In this document: piece after piece, positions 882 to 50,230 of the stretch
How positions within the stretch are numbered: position 1 is the first letter of the stretch
Layout of the letters: every line of letters begins with the position of its first letter
Origin: Dicyema japonicum
Lineage: Eukaryota > Animalia > Dicyemida
Length of the DNA stretch: 64,000 nucleotides
Assembly: GCA_011109175.1 (NCBI GenBank)
Contig: RDEW01000036.1
Span: forward strand, 547,281-611,280
Reading direction: 5' to 3'
Position numbers and translations under genes: made by a program
Notes under the pieces: generated by a model
The model's database searches: none
What the model was told of the DNA's origin: nothing
Seen by the model: only the letters and a program-made list of their open reading frames with translations

Positions 882-1265
882 TAGGGGAACCAGAAAATTG
901 CAAATTTCAAAATAAAAATTGCAAATAATAATATTTTTAATCTTTATTTTGGAATATAATAAAAATAGAAAAAATTATAGTATTGATTAAATTTTAATTA
1001 AAATGACAGTTATGACAAAGGTAACGTCTGTGGCTCGGTAATTGCTCTGGCTCGCGATATATTTAATAACTTTGTCATAAAATTTAACAACTTTAGCAAA
1101 TAATTTAATAACTAGGCAAAGAATTGGTATCGCAGTTGTCCGCGGAAACGCTTACTCCGTGATGTCAGCAGCCGCTCTCCCCCATAGTTAATAAATAATA
1201 GTTAATAAATTTTTCATTTAATTTATGGGATTATTATTTATTTTTTGGGATTATTATTTATATTT

Positions 1266-1657
1266 TTTTAAAGCCTTTTCACGAGAGCCATAGTATTTTA
1301 TTGCTCCGCATAGGCAGGACACACACTTTATTTAAGTAAAGAACAGTTAATTTTAACTAATCGTAGAACCAAGGAATGATCTTCACTTCTTTTTTTTTTG
1401 TGTGAGAGTCCTTTCTAGACAATCCAGTTCGCAGTAAGTATCCACTGATGACGGCGTCACTCGTCAAACCAAAAGTTGAAGCACCATTACTGTAGTCCCC
1501 ATACAAGCCCACCAGGGACCTTTTGCCTGCTACGTTTCCGTCCTGAGCCACTACAGTCCTCATTATACCAACCTGATCACAAAACCTTCGTTAAGCAACC
1601 ATGTCTAGGCACACAGTACAGGGGCAGTAGGCACCACAACGACCAGCAAGCTGGCCA
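1266..1657 (-). mobile_element. Chimeric retrocopy: SRP RNA head plus 3' part of the tRNA-SINE
   Basis: Flanked by 13-bp direct repeat ATTATTTATATTT (1253-1265, 1658-1670). 1266-1470 is nearly identical to the 3' ~200 nt of the SINE at 19948-20296. Confidence 0.8.
1471..1656 (-). ncRNA. SRP (7SL) RNA, S domain / compact form
   Basis: Minus strand has helix 8 GGCUCAGG-ACG-GAAA-CGU-AGCAGG (SRP54-binding CAGG/AGCA motif, GNRA loop at 1538-1535) and helix 6 GGUUGCUUAAC-GAAG-GUUUUGUGAUC (GNAR loop at 1589-1586). A long helix 5 pairs GUUGUGGUGCC/GGUGCUUCAAC, UACUG/CAGUA and CCCC/GGGG. Ends in UUUU. Confidence 0.85.
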
Positions 1658-1704
1658 ATTATTTATATTTATTGTATTATTGTTTATTTTTTTTTATTTA
1701 TATC

Positions 1705-2108
1705 TATCGACAATAAATAGGACGCTAGAGACATTTGGATATAGTTTTAAGAAGATTCAATTTGTACCTATGGCGAGAAATTCTACAATAAATATGGAAG
1801 AAAGATATGCCAGAAAAATAATTGAAATTGATAATCAACGGCTTATTTTTATAGACGAAATAGGAGTCAATTTTTCGATGAGATCCAAATTTGGAAGATC
1901 TATAAAAGGAGTTACTCCGAAAAAATGTATTAGAAACATAAGAGAGAAAATTTTTTCTATTTGTGCTGCTATTTCAGTGGACAGCCTTTTACATTACGAA
2001 ATCAATTCCTCCCTTTATCGCACGGAGACGTTCATTGATTTTGTAATACAGCTTAATTATAAGCTTAAACATGCAGGGGAAAAAGTATGGTTATATGTTA
2101 TTATTTAA
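1705..2108 (+). mobile_element. IS630-Tc1-mariner transposase fragment (DDE_3-like)
   Basis: RLIFIDEIGVN...FGRSIKG...SICAAIS motif pattern typical of the N-terminal half of the DDE domain; truncated, no TIRs seen. Confidence 0.7.
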
Positions 2109-19227: not shown

Positions 19228-19947
19228 TCTTGCTTTAGAAAATTGATTAATTCAGCTTTATAAGCTTAACTAACTTATAAATATATTATTTTAATTGGTT
19301 AACCATCAAAAACAATAAATAATAAATATTTTAATAAATTAATTATCACACTCTACTTACTTGCGGTCACCAATATATGCAGTTACTAAGAAATCAGATT
19401 ATCACACCCACAGTTTGTCCATCCAATATTGTCCAAGCAAGTTCATCCCATTCAACGCTCATTTCTCGTTCCTAGTTGAGCCAGTTGTCCATAATCCAAG
19501 AGTCATCAGTCATAATTACTTCATAAAGGCGGCCAACATGCCGAACATCCGCCTTTATGATAACCTTATCAAATACCTCAAATACGACCATAGTTACGAG
19601 AAAACTCCAAACCTGTTATGGAGACTGGCTCAAGATACCCGTTAGTTTCGACCTTCCCTTATCGGTCTGGATTGCTTAGTTAACTGAAGACACTCTTTTA
19701 ACTCTGATAATCTTGAGTCAACAATAATTATCACAATCCATTTACATGCGGTTTCTCAGGAAACCCTAATTGATTAAACGGTAAAGTGCGCTCGCTACAT
19801 GGGCGTGTGTAGGGTCAAGGAGGAACACTAGAATAAATTGAGGACTCTTTTGGGACGATTCAGAGTCACATGGTTCTCTAGATCTAGTCTTCAGTTGTGG
19901 TCTTTTGACGTTATTTTATCATTCAATAAATCTTATTTTACATGTTA

Positions 19948-20296
19948 ATAATAATAATAATAATAAAGCCTTTTCACGAGAGCCATAGTATTTTATAGCT
20001 CCGCATAGGCAGGACACACACTTTATTTAAGTAAAGAACAGTTAATTTTAACTAATCGTAGAACCAAGGAATGATCTCACTTCTTTTTTTTTCTTTTTCT
20101 TGTGTGAGTGTCCTTTCTAGACAAATCCAGTTCCGCAGTGAGTATTCACTGATGACGGCGTCACTCGTCAAACCATTTCTGCATCGTAGATGCGTGGAAC
20201 CTTCCACCAGGTGAACAGCAGCGAGATTTGAACCCGTAGCCTAAGCCACTTAAGCCGACACCTAACCACTAAGCCACCCCAGAGAATGTTCCTCAG
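19948..20296 (-). mobile_element. Full-length tRNA-derived SINE (349 bp)
   Basis: A box TGGCTTAGTGG (20276-20266), B box GGTTCAAATC (20234-20225), (ATT)n tail, 13-bp TSD ATTTTACATGTTA (19935-19947, 20297-20309). Confidence 0.9.
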
Positions 20297-20477
20297 ATTT
20301 TACATGTTACTGTCTCTAATTCTGTCCTCCACCTAATCCTGTCATCAGAACGAGGTTTTTTGAAACAAATACACTATTTTGTTTCTATAAGGGCTGTCAT
20401 AAAATATACGACCCCCTTCTCCAATGGACCAATCAGAATTTTCCCTACCAGAGGACATCTGTGTAAACCGTCTAGGC

Positions 20478-26012: not shown

Positions 26013-26115
26013 ATAATAATATTTATTAATTAAACTTTTATTTATTATTTAAATTTATGTTACATTGTTAACCACAAAGTAAAGATTCAATTATCCAAGT
26101 TGTTAATTGGTCTGA

Positions 26116-28336
26116 TGATAAATAGTGACCATAAAATGGTTATTGGCAAGTTCTCCTTGAAGAAATACTACATTGGCAGGAAGAACCTAAGTCTAAGCAA
26201 AACGCTACCACCTTACCATACCCATGTATATATGACTGAGAAGCTCTGGTCTCAGCCGCTGCTGGTGACAAACTACCAAAAACATATAGAGAACCACCTA
26301 TATACATTACCAGCTAATATGACTATACAAGACCTATGGGATCAGACCAAAAGCATTATTTGCCTTGCCGCAAACACCCACCTTGGAGTGAGACGGCAGA
26401 CAACCGGAAATATGTCACTTGGCCATCCAGACTCCTTATTACTGGCAAAACAACAACGAGAAATATGGATACAGAGTCTAAACACGACGGATATACATAT
26501 CAAAAACAAACTACGAACTGAACGAAATATTATCAAGAGAAGAATCATGAAGCTTAATAATGAACACTCGAAGGATGTCTTCCTATCACATCTTAGAGAG
26601 CTGGAGCAACTAAAGGACAATGCACAAATGTTCGCTGCAGTCCGACTAATGCGAGGAAAGAAAAAAGCGACAGTACATGTTATGGATGGGAAGGGGAAAC
26701 TTATCTTAAAACCAGACGAACAGATCGAATTGATTGCTGCCCATTTTGAAAAACTGTTCAATGCGAACGGCCAAGAACTGGCCCCTTTCATCGGAGAACC
26801 GCGGATGCTGGAAACAATTATCACATCTAAGGAAGTTCAGAGTGCGTGCAGTAAGCTAAAGAATCACAGGAGCGCTGGACCAGACAACATCCCTCCCGAA
26901 CTGCTGAAATATGGACCTATGCGTCTATTCGAAACCATTGCGACATTGTTAAATGGAATGTTTACATCCAACTCTGTCCTACCACTGGGGAAAGGGACAT
27001 TGATACCTATACAAAAGCCTAACAAACCAAAGGGACCACTAGAAAGCCTACGCCCAGTCATATTGTTAAACACATTACGAAAAGTTCTTGCATCTGTTGC
27101 TTTGGACCGCTTAAAACATCCTGCAGGAAATTACCTATCAGCATGCCATAGTGGATTTCGTGAAGGAAGGTCGACAGCGGACATTCTGTGGAGCCACAGG
27201 TGGCGGTGTGCAACGGCTCAAAGATACAAAAATGCCACGACCATCCTGGGGATCGATATGTCAAGAGCTTTCGACACCATTAGCCGACACAAGCTAATGG
27301 TTGTCCTTCATCAATTTGTGGACCAATCATTGCTACGGATAATCAGAGTACTTCTCTCAAGTACTGAACTGTCAGTCCGAATTGGGAGAACTCTATCCCG
27401 ACCATTCAAAACTACAATCGGCACTCCTCAGGGAGACTCCTCTCTCCCTTGCTATTTGTGATTTATCTCGAAGCCGCACTACGTGATCTAAGAACATGCT
27501 ATCAAGGAAAAATATATGAAGTCGTTTATGCAGATGACGTGGACTTTATATCCGAGGATACAGAAGCCCTCACACATCTGCTGGAAAATGCACCGGACAA
27601 ACTGGGGGAATGGTTCCTCATCGTTAACAGGGCCAAAACGGAAATCACGGAAATCAAAAGAATGGACAACATCCTTAATGAACGTTGGCGACATGTTAAT
27701 AAGCTTGGATCCCTACTGGGGGACACAGAAGACATCATCAAAAGGAAAACACTTGCAGGAGTAGCAATGCGAAAACTCAAAAAGGGATGGCTGAAAGGAC
27801 TAGATGTCAATCTGCGGATACGCATGTACAATGCATTTGTGAAACCGATACTGACATACAATGCTGGTACTTGGGCCTGTACAGGTGCGGAATCAATGGC
27901 TCTCGATGGGTTCCACAGAAAACAGCTTAGAGTATTATTTGGCATGCAGTGGCCGGCCAGAATCTCGAATACCGGTATTTACAAAAAATGCAAGAGTAGG
28001 CCTCTAAGCCTGGAAATCACTGACGCCCGGTGGAGACTGTTTGGTCACGTACTACGCATGGATCTTGCTGCCCCGGCTAATGTGGCGATGGAGGACCATT
28101 TCATGTTCGAGGGCAAATGCTTCCGTGGCAGACCAAGAATGACCCTACCTATCATGCTGCACAAAGACCTCCAAAGGATAAAGAAATGCCTAAAGACGGG
28201 AGACGATCTGGACATGCTGAGATCGACTGCGTGTAACCGTGGAGGATGGAAGAGGCTAACTAATAACATTGTTTCTTGTATTGCACATGCTTTGCTATAA
28301 CTATTATGGCAAGGCGATAAGTGCTGTAATAATAAA
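26116..28336 (+). mobile_element. RTE-clade LINE, 5'-truncated, nearly intact RT
   Basis: SAGPDNIPPELLK, RPVILLN, SGFREGRS, GIDMSRAFD, GTPQGDS, YADDVD, C-terminal RTE tail, (TAA)n end; 12-bp TSD TAATTGGTCTGA (26104-26115, 28337-28348); single frameshift at a C run. Confidence 0.95.
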
Positions 28337-35662: not shown

Positions 35663-35980
35663 GGGCCTCAAAATAAAGTGGTTGATTTATTGACTTATGT
35701 GGAACGAGTGTCGGGAAACAGGCCTGATGGTCCCTAGATCGAATCTCGCTGAGGCACATTTCGACTGAAGGTTCCACGCATCTACGATGCTTTGGCTTGA
35801 AGAGTGCTATGAACATTTTTATGCGGAATCAGATTGTCTATAAAGGCATACCAACAAAAAGAAGCATTCTTGGTTCTCCCTCTACGATTAGTTATAATAA
35901 CTGTTCTTTACTTAAAGTGTGTGTTCTGCCTGAGGGGAGTTATAGGTAATATGGCTCTGCGTAAAAGTGCAGAATTATTA
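35663..35980 (+). mobile_element. Diverged copy of the tRNA-derived SINE
   Basis: Shares gaaggttccacgcatctacgatgc, ctacgattagtt..aactgttctttacttaaa and the 3' tail with the 20-kb copy; degenerate A and B boxes. Confidence 0.75.
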
Positions 35981-43299: not shown

Positions 43300-44931
43300 T
43301 TAGTAATCTAATGGTACAACAACCTCCACATAATTGATAGGGAAATAACCAGTTTTCCCACCAACAGACCCATACATCCAATTTTGGTCCAATCTTGATA
43401 TCAAATCAATACGATTCCCCGTCGAAAATGAAATCTCATCATCCTGCTCTGCTTCAAAGTTGTACAAAGCACGTGCCCACGGTTTATCACCCACTTCAAA
43501 ATTGTTATAGGAAACATTAGTTTGATACGTCATCGTTTCATCCTTTTCAGCATTAGAGGTGGGGACATCATCCTGATAAGTAGTTGTACCAAGATTAGAC
43601 AAATAGGAGGTCGCATCAAAGTGAGAGGGAGGAAAATCACACTGATAAGTAGTTGTACCAAGATTAGACTGGTAGGAGGTCGCATTAAAGTGAGAGGAGG
43701 GAACATCACACTGATAAGTAGTTGTACCAATATTAGACAGGTAGGAAGTCGCATCAAAGTGAGAGGGGGGAACATCACACTGATAAGTAGTTGTACCAAG
43801 ATTAGACTGGTAGGAAGTCGCATCAAAGTGAGAGGGGGGAACATCACACTGATAAGTAGTTGTACCAAGATTAGACTGGTAGGAGGTCGCATCAAAGTGA
43901 GAGGGGGGGACATCACACTGATAAGCCGGTTCACTGTTGGTGGCATAGTTAAATGAAGGAACAAAAGTTTGGGGAGGATTGTCATTATAGTACTCAGCAT
44001 CCTCAGAATAATTATTAACACTCGACATACTCTGTTGGTCAGTGATAGCACGTTGGGTACTAAGATATACACAGAAAACCTACATTTGCTTCAGTGATTC
44101 CAGTAAATCATTAAAATTATCTAAGGACTTTGAGAAGTACTCAGCAAAGGCGGTGGAACACTCCTTCAGCTGGTTGATCTTCTCCAACTACAATAAAGTT
44201 CACTAATACATCATTCGACAGGAAGGAGGCCATGGCTACGGAGCAGGAGTCCCTCGTGGACTCAAATTTGTTCTGGGCCTCTACCAACTCATCGGAGGAG
44301 GGCACCCCGTTATCTAGATTATACCATCCACTACTTTTGCATTTCCTCTTGTTGGAATCAAAGTCCAGTTTCCGACTCATCATCTTCTTGTTAAGGTACT
44401 GGAATAATAAAATCAGCCAACATTGATCTCCTTGAGTTCGTTTGAGTGAAACTGATGAATTGGCTCTAAGAACACCTGGATGATAGTCTCATCCATTTGC
44501 TCTTTATATGAGGACTGCAGTTTCAAGGCATCCGCGAACGAGGAAAGGGCGGAGGCTGGGTTAATCACAACAACAACAATAATTGGGGCAATTGGAAAGT
44601 TCGTTGGCGTATTTACCACACGTCTCTGATAGTAACAAATCTGACTGAGAAGTAGCGTATTTTGATGACTTCCTTCCACTCAGAAGAGAGAGGTGTCCTG
44701 AGCTTGAAGTTATCCTCAGACAGTTTTCCATTCGATCAGTCACTTCATTTATCATGTTCCCGAAGATTTGACAACTCTGTTGTTAGCTAAAGAGAATACC
44801 TTCTCCATTTTAACAAAGTCCTCGTCCAATTCGGTTCCTTTGACAGACCCAATTTTCTGAATGACATACTATATTTATTTTTGAAACATTACCTGATTAG
44901 CTTTGTTCAACTTTTTTGTGATCACCTTCAT
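43300..44931 (-). CDS. Endophilin (N-BAR + SH3) with repeat-expanded linker
   Basis: KKLNKANQYVIQKIGSVKGTELDEDFVKMEK...KMMSRKLDFD...; SH3 ARALYNFEAEQDDEISF..G..I.L...LDQNWMYG...GYFPINYVEV. Seven introns of 21-24 nt (44869-44892, 44777-44799, 44556-44577, 44399-44421, 44314-44334, 44188-44209, 44060-44083). Confidence 0.95.
43579..43923 (-). repeat. Coding tandem repeat, 5 x 69 bp plus a partial unit
   Basis: Unit YQCDVPPSHFDATSYQSNLGTTT (23 aa), in frame within endophilin. Confidence 0.95.
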
Positions 44932-47499: not shown

Positions 47500-50230
47500 G
47501 TCTCCATATTTTTCTCGGTGTTCCGACTGCGTTCCTGCGCATTTCCGATATTAAGGAGGTCCGCATACCTGAGTCCTTCGCAGGGGCACTGTTCCAGTCG
47601 CCTCTATCATATTTTCTAGGTTTCTAGGCAGGATTTCCACTTGGGAATATTTCTTTAGTAAGTTTGCTGCCTTCACTTGAATGTTGCATATCTTGTCCAA
47701 ATTCGTTGCAGAAAGGTTAGATCCCCAGATATTACATGCGTATTCTATTGATGAACTGTTTGTATATGACATCCAGACCACTCAGATCTTTTTTGTCTCT
47801 TAGGTTTCCCAAGAACGCCTTCAGAAAGTTGATTTTCCTCGTACAAGTCAATAACATATTTTCGACATGTTTTGTAAAGGTTAAGAAAGTGTCAAAGGTA
47901 ACTCCCAGGAATCGATACTTTTCCTAGTTTTCTGTTTGTCGTAATATGGCCAACACCGACTTCTTCGGGCTAGCAGTCAATTGATTTTCTCAAAGCCATA
48001 AACTTAGTTTATTCAGATTATCCTGTACTATTCTCGTTGCTTCGATGACACTCACATCCCTCGAGGCAATGACTATATTATCAGCATACGTTAATAATAT
48101 ATCATCGTCCCCCTGAGGGAGTGGCAAGTCATTCATCATAAGGTTAAACAAGAAGGGAGATAATGGGAAGTCTGGGGAACGCCATTTGCTTCAGCATTGG
48201 GTAAATATTCGAAAGTTTCCATATTATTTATTTAACCCAAGAACACCAATAGTTAATTTAATTGTATTAAACTAATTAGGTGATCCCGGCCGCCTCCATC
48301 AGGTCTTTCATCTTCTTCCGGTAGACCTTCCGAGATCCAACACAGCTTCTCTGAGGACGGGAGGGTTTTGAAAGAGAAGCAAGAGGGGTGATGTAAAGTC
48401 TTCTAGTAAGACCCAATCCATTAGAGCATTGTAGGAAGTTGGATTTTCGGCACAGAGCGGCGAATCCCTTCCCATTTTGTCCGATAAGGTCTTCCAGAGA
48501 GGTGGGTGTGAGACTGACTGTTCTCACGAGCTTGCCGATAGTTGTAGCTGATAGGGACTGAATATCATTGGTTTTCTGTTTGTTCGTCCAGGATAGGTTG
48601 ATTCCCTAAGACGCACAGGCGTAGCTGATAGATGGCTCAATGAATTGTTTATGTCGTAGTTTCAATGCTGGGAAAGGGGTTCTGATGCCAACAAAAATAG
48701 ATTTGATCAAACCAAGCTTTCTTGAACAGGTTCCGGAGATATATTCGACATGAGGGGAGAAGGTCATGTGCGTGTCAAAGGCGACTCCTAAGATCTTCAA
48801 TTTCTTCGTAAATGGTATTTTAGTTTGGTTGATAAATAAATCAACGGTCATTCTTCCAAGACGTTTGTCTGATGTAAATAGGGATGTGGAGGACTTCTCA
48901 GGAGATATATCAAGTCTGTTGGAGATTAACCAATTTTGAATCACGTGTAGTTGTTTTTGAACTCTTTCTGAGGCTTTTAGGAGATCCTGGTCACGGGATC
49001 CAATTAGAATGTCATCAGCGTAGGAGAGGAGAAGGTCGTCTTTATCAACTGATCGTGGCAAATCGGACATAAAATGGTTGAATAACACGGGGGACAAAGG
49101 AGAGCCTTGCGGAACACCATTGGGAAGTAGTCTCGAAAGTGATTTGGTCCTATCCATACGAACCTGGGCTCTTCTCCCGCTGAGGAAATTCGAAAGCCAG
49201 AGTTATAGATTGAGGTTAATGGAGAGTCCAAATAATTTCCTGGTTAAGATTTTCCTGGAGACAGAGTAAAAGGCTACAGAGCAGACGATGGTTTTGAGGT
49301 GACGAGGACTTGAGTTGAAGCCATCAAGGATAAATTGATTGAGAGAAGTAAGGTGGGTGGACGTTGAATAGAACTTTCTGATCCATGTTGAGAGGAAATG
49401 AAGGGGATGGACGGGGAAATGAGATCAAGTACCAGTTTTTCCAATAATTTTGAAAATGAACATAATAGAGAAATTGGTCGGTATGAAGCGGGGTTGTTTT
49501 TGTCCTTGCCAGGTTTTGGTATTGGGCGTATGTGGGAAAGTTGGAATTCATGTTCAAAGAATAGTTGAAAATAAGGGAGATTACCCCAATAGTAACCGGT
49601 CCAAGGTGTTTAAGAAGTATTGAAGGGATGCCATTTGGACCATAAGAGCGGGAGGGATTAATCATCTTAAAGCCTTCGAATTCGTTTGAATGAGAAATAA
49701 AGGTGATCGGCGGGATTCTTTTAGGTCTTATCAAGAACAAAGAGGGTCCATCCATTTTCTTGAAGGTTTTGTGACTTATACCGGTATAATACTTCATTAG
49801 TTTATATAAGCTGTGTTGGTCTGTCTTTTGTTTCAAGGTGAAGTTTTCTTCAGGACAAAGTCTTTTTATTGCCTTCCAGACCATCTGAGTGGATTTCTGA
49901 AATGGGAGAGAGCAGATTCGATTTTCCCACTTGTTTGCTACAGCCCTTCTAATCCTTCTTGAAATTTTATCATTGAGAGACTTTGTCTGGGATTTCTGTC
50001 CCGGAAGGGGATGTACGTGTCTTTTAAAGCGGTTTCTTTCTCTGATTAGTGATTTGGTATTCTGATCCAAAAATTCGTTGTAGTATTTGAACCTTCCAAG
50101 AGGAATGAATCTACTACGAGCATCAAGAATTATTTTGTTCAAATGGTCGACGGCCTCATCAATAGAACGGAATATGTTCAAGTCAAAGCAAAGTAGAGCC
50201 TGGTTAACATGTTTTGAGTAGCCGTCCTAA
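47500..50230 (-). mobile_element. Two tandem I/Jockey-like LINE RT fragments (47500-48190; 48270-50230)
   Basis: GVPQGSPLSPVLFNHFMSDL...SYADDILI in one and GVPQ..PLSPFLFNLMMNDL...TYADNIVI in the other; PSRSYGPNGI. Confidence 0.85.

What the first reader, a model, noticed from the sequence alone, without database searches (positions are those of the whole stretch)
1471..1656. Candidate minimal (~186 nt) animal SRP RNA without an Alu domain
Seen: helices 5, 6 and 8 fold fully. The 3' strand (CAAC) closes against the 5' strand (GUUG) and is followed by UUUU. Only 16 nt precede it, which can fold as GGCCAG-CUUG-CUGGUC, with no UGUNR Alu motif there. Known: metazoan SRP RNAs are ~300 nt, and the Alu domain binds SRP9/14 to slow elongation. 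Inference: this lineage may have lost the Alu domain. Alternative: the first 16 nt resemble the helix-5 5' strand of human 7SL and could pair with UUGGUU across the junction, making this an S-domain fragment of a normal RNA.
Basis: partly seen in the sequence, partly recalled or inferred. Interest (0 to 1): 0.8.

Follow-up and report, generated by a model that had tools for sequence, protein, structure and literature searches.

The report
SRP RNA piece fused to a SINE
The 186-nt sequence really is the signal-binding half of a signal recognition particle RNA, but here it is not a gene: it is the front end of a retro-copied hybrid welded to a truncated SINE, so it cannot show that this animal lost the Alu domain.

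Summary
On the minus strand, 1488-1629 matches the S domain of Rfam Metazoa_SRP (model 104-247 of 299; 58.4 bits, E 2.7e-14, below the gathering score of 70). It is preceded by a 16-nt hairpin, closed by GUUG/CAAC and followed by UUUU. There is no Alu domain here or anywhere else in the window.

The locus is not a free-standing gene. The U-tract runs straight into the body of a very abundant SINE whose 121-nt tRNA-like head is missing, with overlap U-GG at the junction. The SINE tail abuts a T-rich target. Read contigs join the flanks without the whole 390-392-nt block.

The best reading is a chimeric retro-pseudogene, of the kind known from U6/L1 and 7SL/L1 chimeras. A LINE reverse transcriptase began on SINE RNA and jumped onto an SRP RNA.

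I could not settle whether that RNA was a real ~186-nt transcript or a fragment of a normal ~300-nt one. The U-tract junction, paired ends and terminal hairpin (about 2-3% by chance) favour a short RNA. The prior for animals and a diverged second copy that loses similarity inside the hairpin favour a fragment.

I put a functional Alu-less SRP RNA in this lineage at about 0.1. The scan noted the chimera before, on this same stretch (s1-305166).

The parts
1471..1656 (-). SRP-RNA-derived piece, 186 nt (5' hairpin, closing stem, S domain, U4)
   Evidence: Sequence; fold; Rfam match
1488..1629 (-). S domain: distal helix 5, helix 6 (loop GAAG), helix 8 (GGAAAC loop, AGCA)
   Evidence: RF00017 model 104-247 of 299, 58.4 bits, E 2.7e-14. 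The 28-nt helix 8 core is identical to the canonical animal SRP RNA in L003, and one base different in L001 and L002.
1641..1656 (-). 5' terminal hairpin GGCCAG-CUUG-CUGGUC (6 bp, -7.0 kcal/mol)
   Evidence: A hairpin of 6 bp or more occurs in 1.6-3.5% of random or shuffled 16-mers, and in 4 of 180 16-mers from canonical helix 5 5' strands.
1637..1640 (-). GUUG, 5' strand of the closing stem (the stem continues to 1625)
1475..1478 (-). CAAC, 3' strand of the closing stem
1471..1474 (-). UUUU at the SRP/SINE junction; the last U and the following GG are shared with the SINE (microhomology)
   Evidence: Alignment with SINE copy 2, which reads ..GCAGAAAUGGUUUGACGAG. Read loose ends at 1470 show the normal SINE continuation.
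1266..1470 (-). 5'-truncated SINE body and short A tail; the 121-nt tRNA-like head is missing
   Evidence: 93% identity to 19964-20175. Summed word depth in the millions in run X1.
1658..1670 (-). Upstream copy of the 13-nt direct repeat AAATATAAATAAT (possible target-site duplication)
   Evidence: Same length as the duplication around SINE copy 2, but the flank is itself a tandem repeat.
1253..1265 (-). Downstream copy of the 13-nt direct repeat
19948..20296 (-). Reference full-length SINE copy, with A box TGGCTTAGTGG, B box GGTTCAAATCT and an (ATT)6 tail; 13-nt target-site duplication TAACATGTAAAAT at 20297-20309 and 19935-19947
   Evidence: No Rfam tRNA hit.

Best explanation
The locus is a chimeric retro-pseudogene. 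A LINE reverse transcriptase (probably the resident RTE type, which mobilises the SINE) primed on a T-rich nick. It copied about 200 nt of the 3' part of a SINE RNA, then switched template onto an SRP RNA at or next to a U-run. It copied the S domain and stopped at GGCCAG, and the 390-392-nt hybrid was sealed into AT-rich repeated DNA beside a Tc1/mariner-type remnant. The SRP part is a recent cast of a working-type S domain, because all conserved positions are intact. It is not itself a gene. Shown: S-domain identity; direct fusion to a head-less SINE; the SINE tail at the target; the block missing as one unit from related flank copies. Inferred: template switching, and the single event. Not decided: whether the copied RNA was a discrete ~186-nt transcript or part of a normal ~300-nt SRP RNA. 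I lean slightly (about 55:45) to a fragment or aberrant short form over a normal cellular species.
For: S domain. SINE fusion: 1269-1471 is 93% identical to 19964-20175. In copy 2 the same body follows a 121-nt head with A and B boxes and is flanked by a 13-nt duplication. At position 1470 thousands of read contigs continue into the normal SINE head, not into SRP sequence (loose ends). Contigs in all four runs join 1267 to 1658 or 1660, skipping SRP and SINE together. A 13-nt direct repeat brackets exactly 1266-1657. No TSD-like repeat flanks the SINE part alone (read by eye). Upstream there is only AT-rich tandem repeat and a weak DDE_3 remnant, with no second SRP match in 64 kb. 7SL/LINE-1 and U6/LINE-1 chimeras are a known class (bioRxiv 10.1101/2025.02.02.635956).
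Against: The empty-site joints have sides of only 22-24 nt in low-complexity DNA and carry 6-27 other letters. They probably come from paralogous repeat copies, which keep both 13-mers, so neither the duplication nor the single event is proven. A contig with one mismatch over 1552-1657 continues for 68 nt unlike the window, so a near-identical copy, possibly the source gene, exists that I could not read.
Confidence: 0.8

Rival explanations
1. The retrocopy is a full-length cast of this animal's only SRP RNA. That RNA would be a ~186-nt pol III transcript consisting of the S domain closed by a 15-bp stem and a 5' hairpin. It would have no Alu domain and no long helix 5, so there would be no SRP9/14-mediated elongation arrest, as in microsporidia.
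For: The junction lies at UUU(U), as expected for a jump onto the 3' end of a pol III transcript, and an internal T4 would terminate a normal gene. The 5' and 3' ends pair. The first 16 nt form a perfect terminal hairpin (about 2-3% by chance). The outer stem is not recognised as canonical helix 5: an equal-sized excision of a canonical RNA scores 147.5 bits over model 87-260, against 58.4 bits over 104-247 here, and the conserved cGA loop is absent. Conserved S-domain letters are intact, so the source is under selection. Earlier unchecked notes describe a divergent parasite genome with many pseudogenes.
Against: To my knowledge every animal SRP RNA described has an Alu domain. Four animal SRP RNAs fished from metagenomes with this very helix 8 sequence are all full-length canonical. 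A copy 88% identical stops matching at 1652, inside the 5' arm of the hairpin, so the hairpin is not shared by all copies. In run X1 the conserved core has 4-5 times the depth of the window-specific parts, which suggests other SRP sequences in the sample, although these could come from a host or contaminant. A's added by the reverse transcriptase before a jump could also give the U-run.
Confidence: 0.1
2. A short S-domain-only derivative gene (a 'mini-7SL', made by deletion and a new terminator) is transcribed alongside a normal 7SL RNA. This locus is a retrocopy of that side product.
For: The same structural arguments for a discrete ~186-nt RNA apply. A near-identical contig at about 7 times the depth of the diverged copy could be a small gene family.
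Against: To my knowledge no such RNA is known in any animal; the known 7SL derivatives (Alu, B1, BC200) keep the Alu part and lose the S part. There are no expression data.
Confidence: 0.25
3. The block is a member of a new composite SINE subfamily whose head is the SRP S domain instead of the tRNA-like head.
For: At least two or three copies share the 5' boundary to within 5 nt but have different upstream sequence.
Against: By eye, the SRP part has no convincing A or B box. The depth of the SRP part is about a thousand times lower than that of the SINE body. There are no other copies in the 64 kb.
Confidence: 0.07
4. Two separate events: a genuine short SRP RNA gene sits here, and a 5'-truncated SINE later landed on its terminator.
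For: T-runs are favoured nick sites for LINE endonucleases.
Against: No duplication flanks the SINE alone (read by eye). The direct repeat and the read joints bracket both parts together. The upstream sequence is tandem AT-rich repeat without a suitably placed TATA or PSE-like element (read by eye).
Confidence: 0.04

Closest known systems
LINE-mediated chimeric retrocopies of small RNAs (U6/L1, 7SL/L1, U2, 5S and others; also the Magnaporthe tripartite chimeras)
   Same: A small pol III RNA in sense orientation at the 5' side is joined directly to the 3' part of a retroelement. The joint is at the small RNA's 3' U-run with microhomology, and the whole is inserted as one block (papers).
   Different: The partner is a SINE, apparently mobilised by an RTE-type LINE rather than L1. 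The SRP part is only the S domain with a short closing stem, not a full 7SL.
Metazoan SRP (7SL) RNA, Rfam RF00017
   Same: Helices 5 (distal), 6 and 8 with all conserved loop letters. Helix 8 is identical to canonical animal RNAs.
   Different: No helices 2-4 and no proximal helix 5 (about 110 nt missing). 58 bits against 181-270 bits for canonical RNAs. Not a free-standing gene.
Reduced eukaryotic SRP RNAs (microsporidia without a canonical Alu domain or SRP9/14; dikarya and trypanosomatids without helices 3 and 4)
   Same: What the source RNA would resemble if it is a real short RNA: the S domain kept and the Alu end reduced to a hairpin (PMC5499648; PMC4605306).
   Different: Those are single functional genes in lineages where the protein partners are also altered. 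Here neither a gene nor the protein set could be examined, and the host is an animal with a repeat-rich genome.
7SL-derived SINEs (Alu, B1, hagfish SINE1)
   Same: 7SL sequence joined to a retroposon tail.
   Different: Those keep the Alu domain, which carries the internal promoter, and delete the S domain. This is the reverse, and it is low-copy.

Membership tests
Metazoan SRP RNA (RF00017) | S domain: distal helix 5, helix 6 with a GNAR loop, helix 8 with conserved symmetric and asymmetric loops | tested here: met
   Model 104-247, 58.4 bits, E 2.7e-14; conserved letters present
Metazoan SRP RNA (RF00017) | Alu domain: helices 2, 3 and 4 with UGUNR between helices 3 and 4 | tested here: not met
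   No match to model 1-103 at this site or anywhere in the window. The only UGUNR (UGUGG, 1634-1638) lies inside the closing stem.
Metazoan SRP RNA (RF00017) | Reaches Rfam's gathering score (70 bits) | tested here: not met
   58.4 bits. Canonical RNAs score 181-270 bits, and a 186-nt excision of one scores 147.5 bits.
Metazoan SRP RNA (RF00017) | Free-standing pol III gene with its own promoter and terminator | tested here: not met
   The U4 runs directly into a SINE body. The block is bracketed as one insertion. The upstream sequence is AT-rich tandem repeat.
Small-RNA/retroelement chimeric retrocopy (template switching) | The 3' part is a 5'-truncated retroelement whose tail abuts the target | tested here: met
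   The SINE lacks its 121-nt head. The tail GGCUUU-AAAA abuts the T-rich target.
Small-RNA/retroelement chimeric retrocopy (template switching) | The 5' part is a small RNA in the same orientation, joined at its 3' end | tested here: met
   The junction reads ..CAACUUU(U)|GGUUUGAC, with U-GG overlap
Small-RNA/retroelement chimeric retrocopy (template switching) | One target-site duplication encloses both parts; the empty site lacks both | tested here: inconclusive
   A 13-nt repeat lies at 1658-1670 and 1253-1265. Read joints run 1267->1658/1660. However, the flank is a tandem repeat, the joints have short sides and extra letters, and they probably come from paralogous copies.
Alu-less functional eukaryotic SRP RNA (microsporidian type) | It is the only SRP RNA of the genome, and SRP9/14 are absent | not testable with these tools
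   Only this 64-kb window and contig summaries of four runs were available. Collection scans found no relatives.
Alu-less functional eukaryotic SRP RNA (microsporidian type) | A discrete transcript with the predicted ends | not testable with these tools
   The runs are contigs of unknown kind, and a filter removes human-like records
7SL-derived SINE | Head from the 7SL Alu domain with an internal promoter; high copy number | tested here: not met
   The head is the S domain. The SRP part has about a thousandth of the depth of the SINE body.

The most novel reading that the evidence does not exclude
This animal's signal recognition particle uses a ~186-nt RNA that is only the S domain, closed by a short stem and a 5' hairpin. 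It would be the first metazoan SRP without an Alu domain, and so without SRP9/14-type elongation arrest. The retrocopy would preserve a full-length cast of that RNA from its first base to its pol III U-tail.
Probability: 0.1. Interest if true: 0.8.

Novelty: new member of a known kind. Interest (0 to 1): 0.3.

Why it matters
As it stands, this is one more example of a reverse transcriptase stitching a cellular small RNA to a retroposon, in an invertebrate RTE/SINE system rather than mammalian L1. That is useful for annotation: this is not the SRP RNA gene. It is also one data point on template switching. Its wider value is as a pointer. Retrocopies record RNA ends, and this one has the look of a complete short RNA. 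If a genome-wide search found no canonical 7SL and no SRP9/14, it would reveal loss of elongation arrest in an animal, so far known only from microsporidia and partly from some fungi and protists. The check is cheap once the whole assembly is in hand.

Tried and rejected
- **Rfam default scan.** It was blank; only the E-value mode found the S domain.
- **Fold energy.** It is not significant for the 186-nt piece (z -1.0) or for the piece extended into the SINE (z -0.1).
- **Collection scans for relatives.**
  - The 30-nt helix 8 string found nothing in metagenome contigs.
  - The 27-nt 5' end found nothing in prokaryote-genome or viral contigs.
  - The SINE core found nothing there either.
  - SINE strings found nothing in the paper library.
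- **Identifying the host.**
  - The SH3 ORF had no homologue.
  - The reverse-transcriptase ORF's nearest named relatives are Octopus, Elysia and Phytophthora LINEs at 40-55% identity.
  - The Atlas gave only broad animal taxa.
- **Sequence homology of the 5' 16 nt to canonical helix 5.** MAFFT aligns GCUGGUC gap-free with one canonical RNA (7/7), but the other two match only 3/7. Overall identity is 26/49, which is too weak to decide.
- **tRNA origin of the SINE head.** ARAGORN and Rfam found nothing; only the A and B boxes are visible.
- **An old, decayed pseudogene.** Rejected, because no conserved S-domain position is hit.
- **The 13-nt repeat as proof of a target-site duplication.** Rejected, because the 13-mer recurs in the tandem flank.

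Full report
**What is there**

Read on the minus strand, 1656->1471 is 186 nt: GGCCAGCUUGCUGGUC, then GUUG, a long irregular stem with two hairpins, CAAC, and UUUU. The real evidence is Infernal.

- The default Rfam scan of the window is blank.
- In E-value mode, 1488-1629 (minus) matches RF00017 Metazoa_SRP positions 104-247 of 299 at 58.4 bits. E is 2.7e-14 locally and 3.5e-12 for the whole window.
- That span is the S domain. The helix 6 GNAR loop (GAAG), the UAA linker and the helix 8 AGG/GGAAAC/AGCA letters are all present.
- Nothing in the 64 kb matches the Alu domain.

**What it is attached to**

BLAST of the neighbourhood against the window shows that 1269-1471 is 93% identical to 19964-20175. 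A third, diverged copy lies at 35832-35966.

At 19948-20296 the same body is preceded by a 121-nt head with tRNA-type A and B boxes (TGGCTTAGTGG and GGTTCAAATCT). It ends in (ATT)6 and is flanked by a 13-nt duplication, TAACATGTAAAAT. This is a complete SINE.

In the finding, the SINE head is replaced by the SRP piece. The joint reads ..CAACUUUU|GGUUUGACGAG, where copy 2 reads ..GCAGAAAU|GGUUUGACGAG. At least three U's are therefore not SINE sequence, and U-GG is shared.

**Read evidence**

Four runs of one sample were laid on the region. They are Logan contigs and their kind (DNA or RNA) is unknown.

- The SINE body has summed word depth in the millions. At 1470 the usual continuation is the SINE head, not SRP sequence.
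- Contigs in all four runs join 1267 to 1658 or 1660, skipping SRP and SINE together.
- A 13-nt direct repeat, AAATATAAATAAT (1658-1670 and 1253-1265), brackets exactly 1266-1657. This is the same length as the duplication around copy 2.

I do not count this as proof of a target-site duplication. The flank is a ~21-nt tandem repeat. The joining contigs have only 22-24 nt on their shorter side and carry 6-27 other letters. They evidently come from paralogous copies of the flank that already hold both 13-mers.

Several other points fit the insertion reading:

- No TSD-like repeat flanks the SINE part alone (read by eye).
- Upstream there is only AT-rich repeat and a weak DDE_3 transposase remnant.
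- The SINE tail abuts a T-run, as expected for target-primed reverse transcription.

The locus is therefore a chimeric retro-insertion, not an SRP RNA gene. Another first-stage note on this same stretch says the same (s1-305166). 7SL/L1 and U6/L1 chimeras are an established class.

**What RNA was copied**

The metagenome scan with the helix 8 string returned four loci, each with a full-length canonical animal SRP RNA (181-270 bits, model 1-299). They serve as comparators.

Arguments for a discrete short RNA:

- The junction lies at a U-run, the expected 3' end of a pol III transcript and the preferred acceptor for template jumps. An internal T4 would terminate a normal gene.
- The last four bases before the U-run pair with bases 17-20, so both ends of the piece meet.
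- The first 16 nt form a perfect terminal hairpin. That occurs in 1.6-3.5% of random or shuffled 16-mers and in 4 of 180 16-mers from canonical helix 5 strands.
- An equal-sized excision of a canonical RNA scores 147.5 bits and aligns over model 87-260. The window piece aligns only over 104-247 and lacks the conserved cGA loop at 99-101. Its outer stem does not look like ordinary helix 5.

Arguments for a fragment:

- To my knowledge every described animal SRP RNA has an Alu domain.
- A transcriptase that enters helix 5 internally, on the 3' strand, would copy round the S domain and back. It would be expected to stall roughly opposite its entry point, where helix 5 is still duplex. Paired ends therefore do not prove completeness (inference).
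- A's added to the cDNA before a jump would also read as U's.
- A copy 88% identical in the reads (13 differences in 111 nt) matches only from 1652. It loses similarity inside the 5' arm of the hairpin and also breaks off at 1542.
- In run X1 the conserved core has 4-5 times the depth of the window-specific parts.
- MAFFT aligns GCUGGUC.. gap-free with the helix 5 strand of one canonical RNA. Overall identity is only 26/49, and the other two canonical RNAs do not share the heptamer.

I cannot decide between the two readings.

**Age and quality of the copy**

No conserved S-domain position is damaged. A contig with one mismatch over 1552-1657 exists elsewhere or as another allele. The retrocopy is therefore young, and its source has a working-type S domain.

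Helix 6 carries two U-U mismatches in the window copy, and the 88% copy has A's that restore both pairs. That copy, however, has a non-GNAR loop (UUAG). Neither looks like the pristine gene.

**Comparison with known systems**

- By mechanism it belongs with small-RNA/retroelement chimeras.
- It fails the membership tests for a metazoan SRP RNA gene: no Alu domain, a score below the gathering threshold, and no free-standing gene.
- It is the reverse of the 7SL-derived SINEs, which keep the Alu part.
[quoted passage not shown] The fungal RNAs without helices 3 and 4 would be a further analogue (PMC4605306).

**Limits**

- The host could not be identified.
- The rest of the genome could not be searched.
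- Only one read-laying run was available.
- The decisive tests are listed under next steps.

**Verdict**

- The locus is an SRP S-domain/SINE chimeric retro-pseudogene (confidence about 0.8).
- The claim that this animal lineage lost the Alu domain is not supported by this locus. I put it at about 0.1.

Noticed in passing
window 19935-20309: A complete copy of the abundant SINE (349 nt, minus strand). It has a 121-nt head with A and B boxes, an (ATT)6 tail and a clean 13-nt target-site duplication, TAACATGTAAAAT. ARAGORN and Rfam do not call the head a tRNA.
   Followed up: partly
window 1150-1212: A second extremely abundant repeat lies just beyond the insertion. Its summed word depth in run X1 is about one million at 1150-1191 (774,000 to 1,050,000), falling to about 182,000 at 1192-1212. 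It is unrelated to the SINE body and has no other copy in this window.
   Followed up: no
window 1770-2105 (+): An ORF with a weak DDE_3 (Tc1/mariner-type transposase) match, E 3e-4 and below Pfam's cut-off. It is probably a decayed DNA transposon next to the insertion site.
   Followed up: partly
window 1216-1267 and 1658-1692: The flanks of the insertion are units of a ~21-nt AT-rich tandem repeat (GGGATTATTATTTAT(A)TTTTT). Related copies elsewhere in the genome are about 20-fold deeper than the SRP piece in the reads.
   Followed up: partly
window 43303-44028 (-): An intronless ORF of 242 aa with six or seven repeats of TTTYQCDVPPSHFDATSYQSNLG and a C-terminal SH3 domain (Pfam E about 1e-12). 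It has no homologue at E 1e-5 or below in the 5.8-billion-protein search.
   Followed up: partly
window 26100-28300 (+) and 48609-50181 (-): LINE reverse-transcriptase ORFs broken by frame changes. The nearest named relatives are Octopus, Elysia and Phytophthora elements at 40-55% identity.
   Followed up: partly
reads only, matching window 1542-1652: A second SRP-like copy 88% identical, within contigs of 574-1213 nt. It is identical to the window over 1622-1652, all its differences lie 3' of that stretch, and it loses similarity at 1542, just before the universally conserved helix 8 loop.
   Followed up: no
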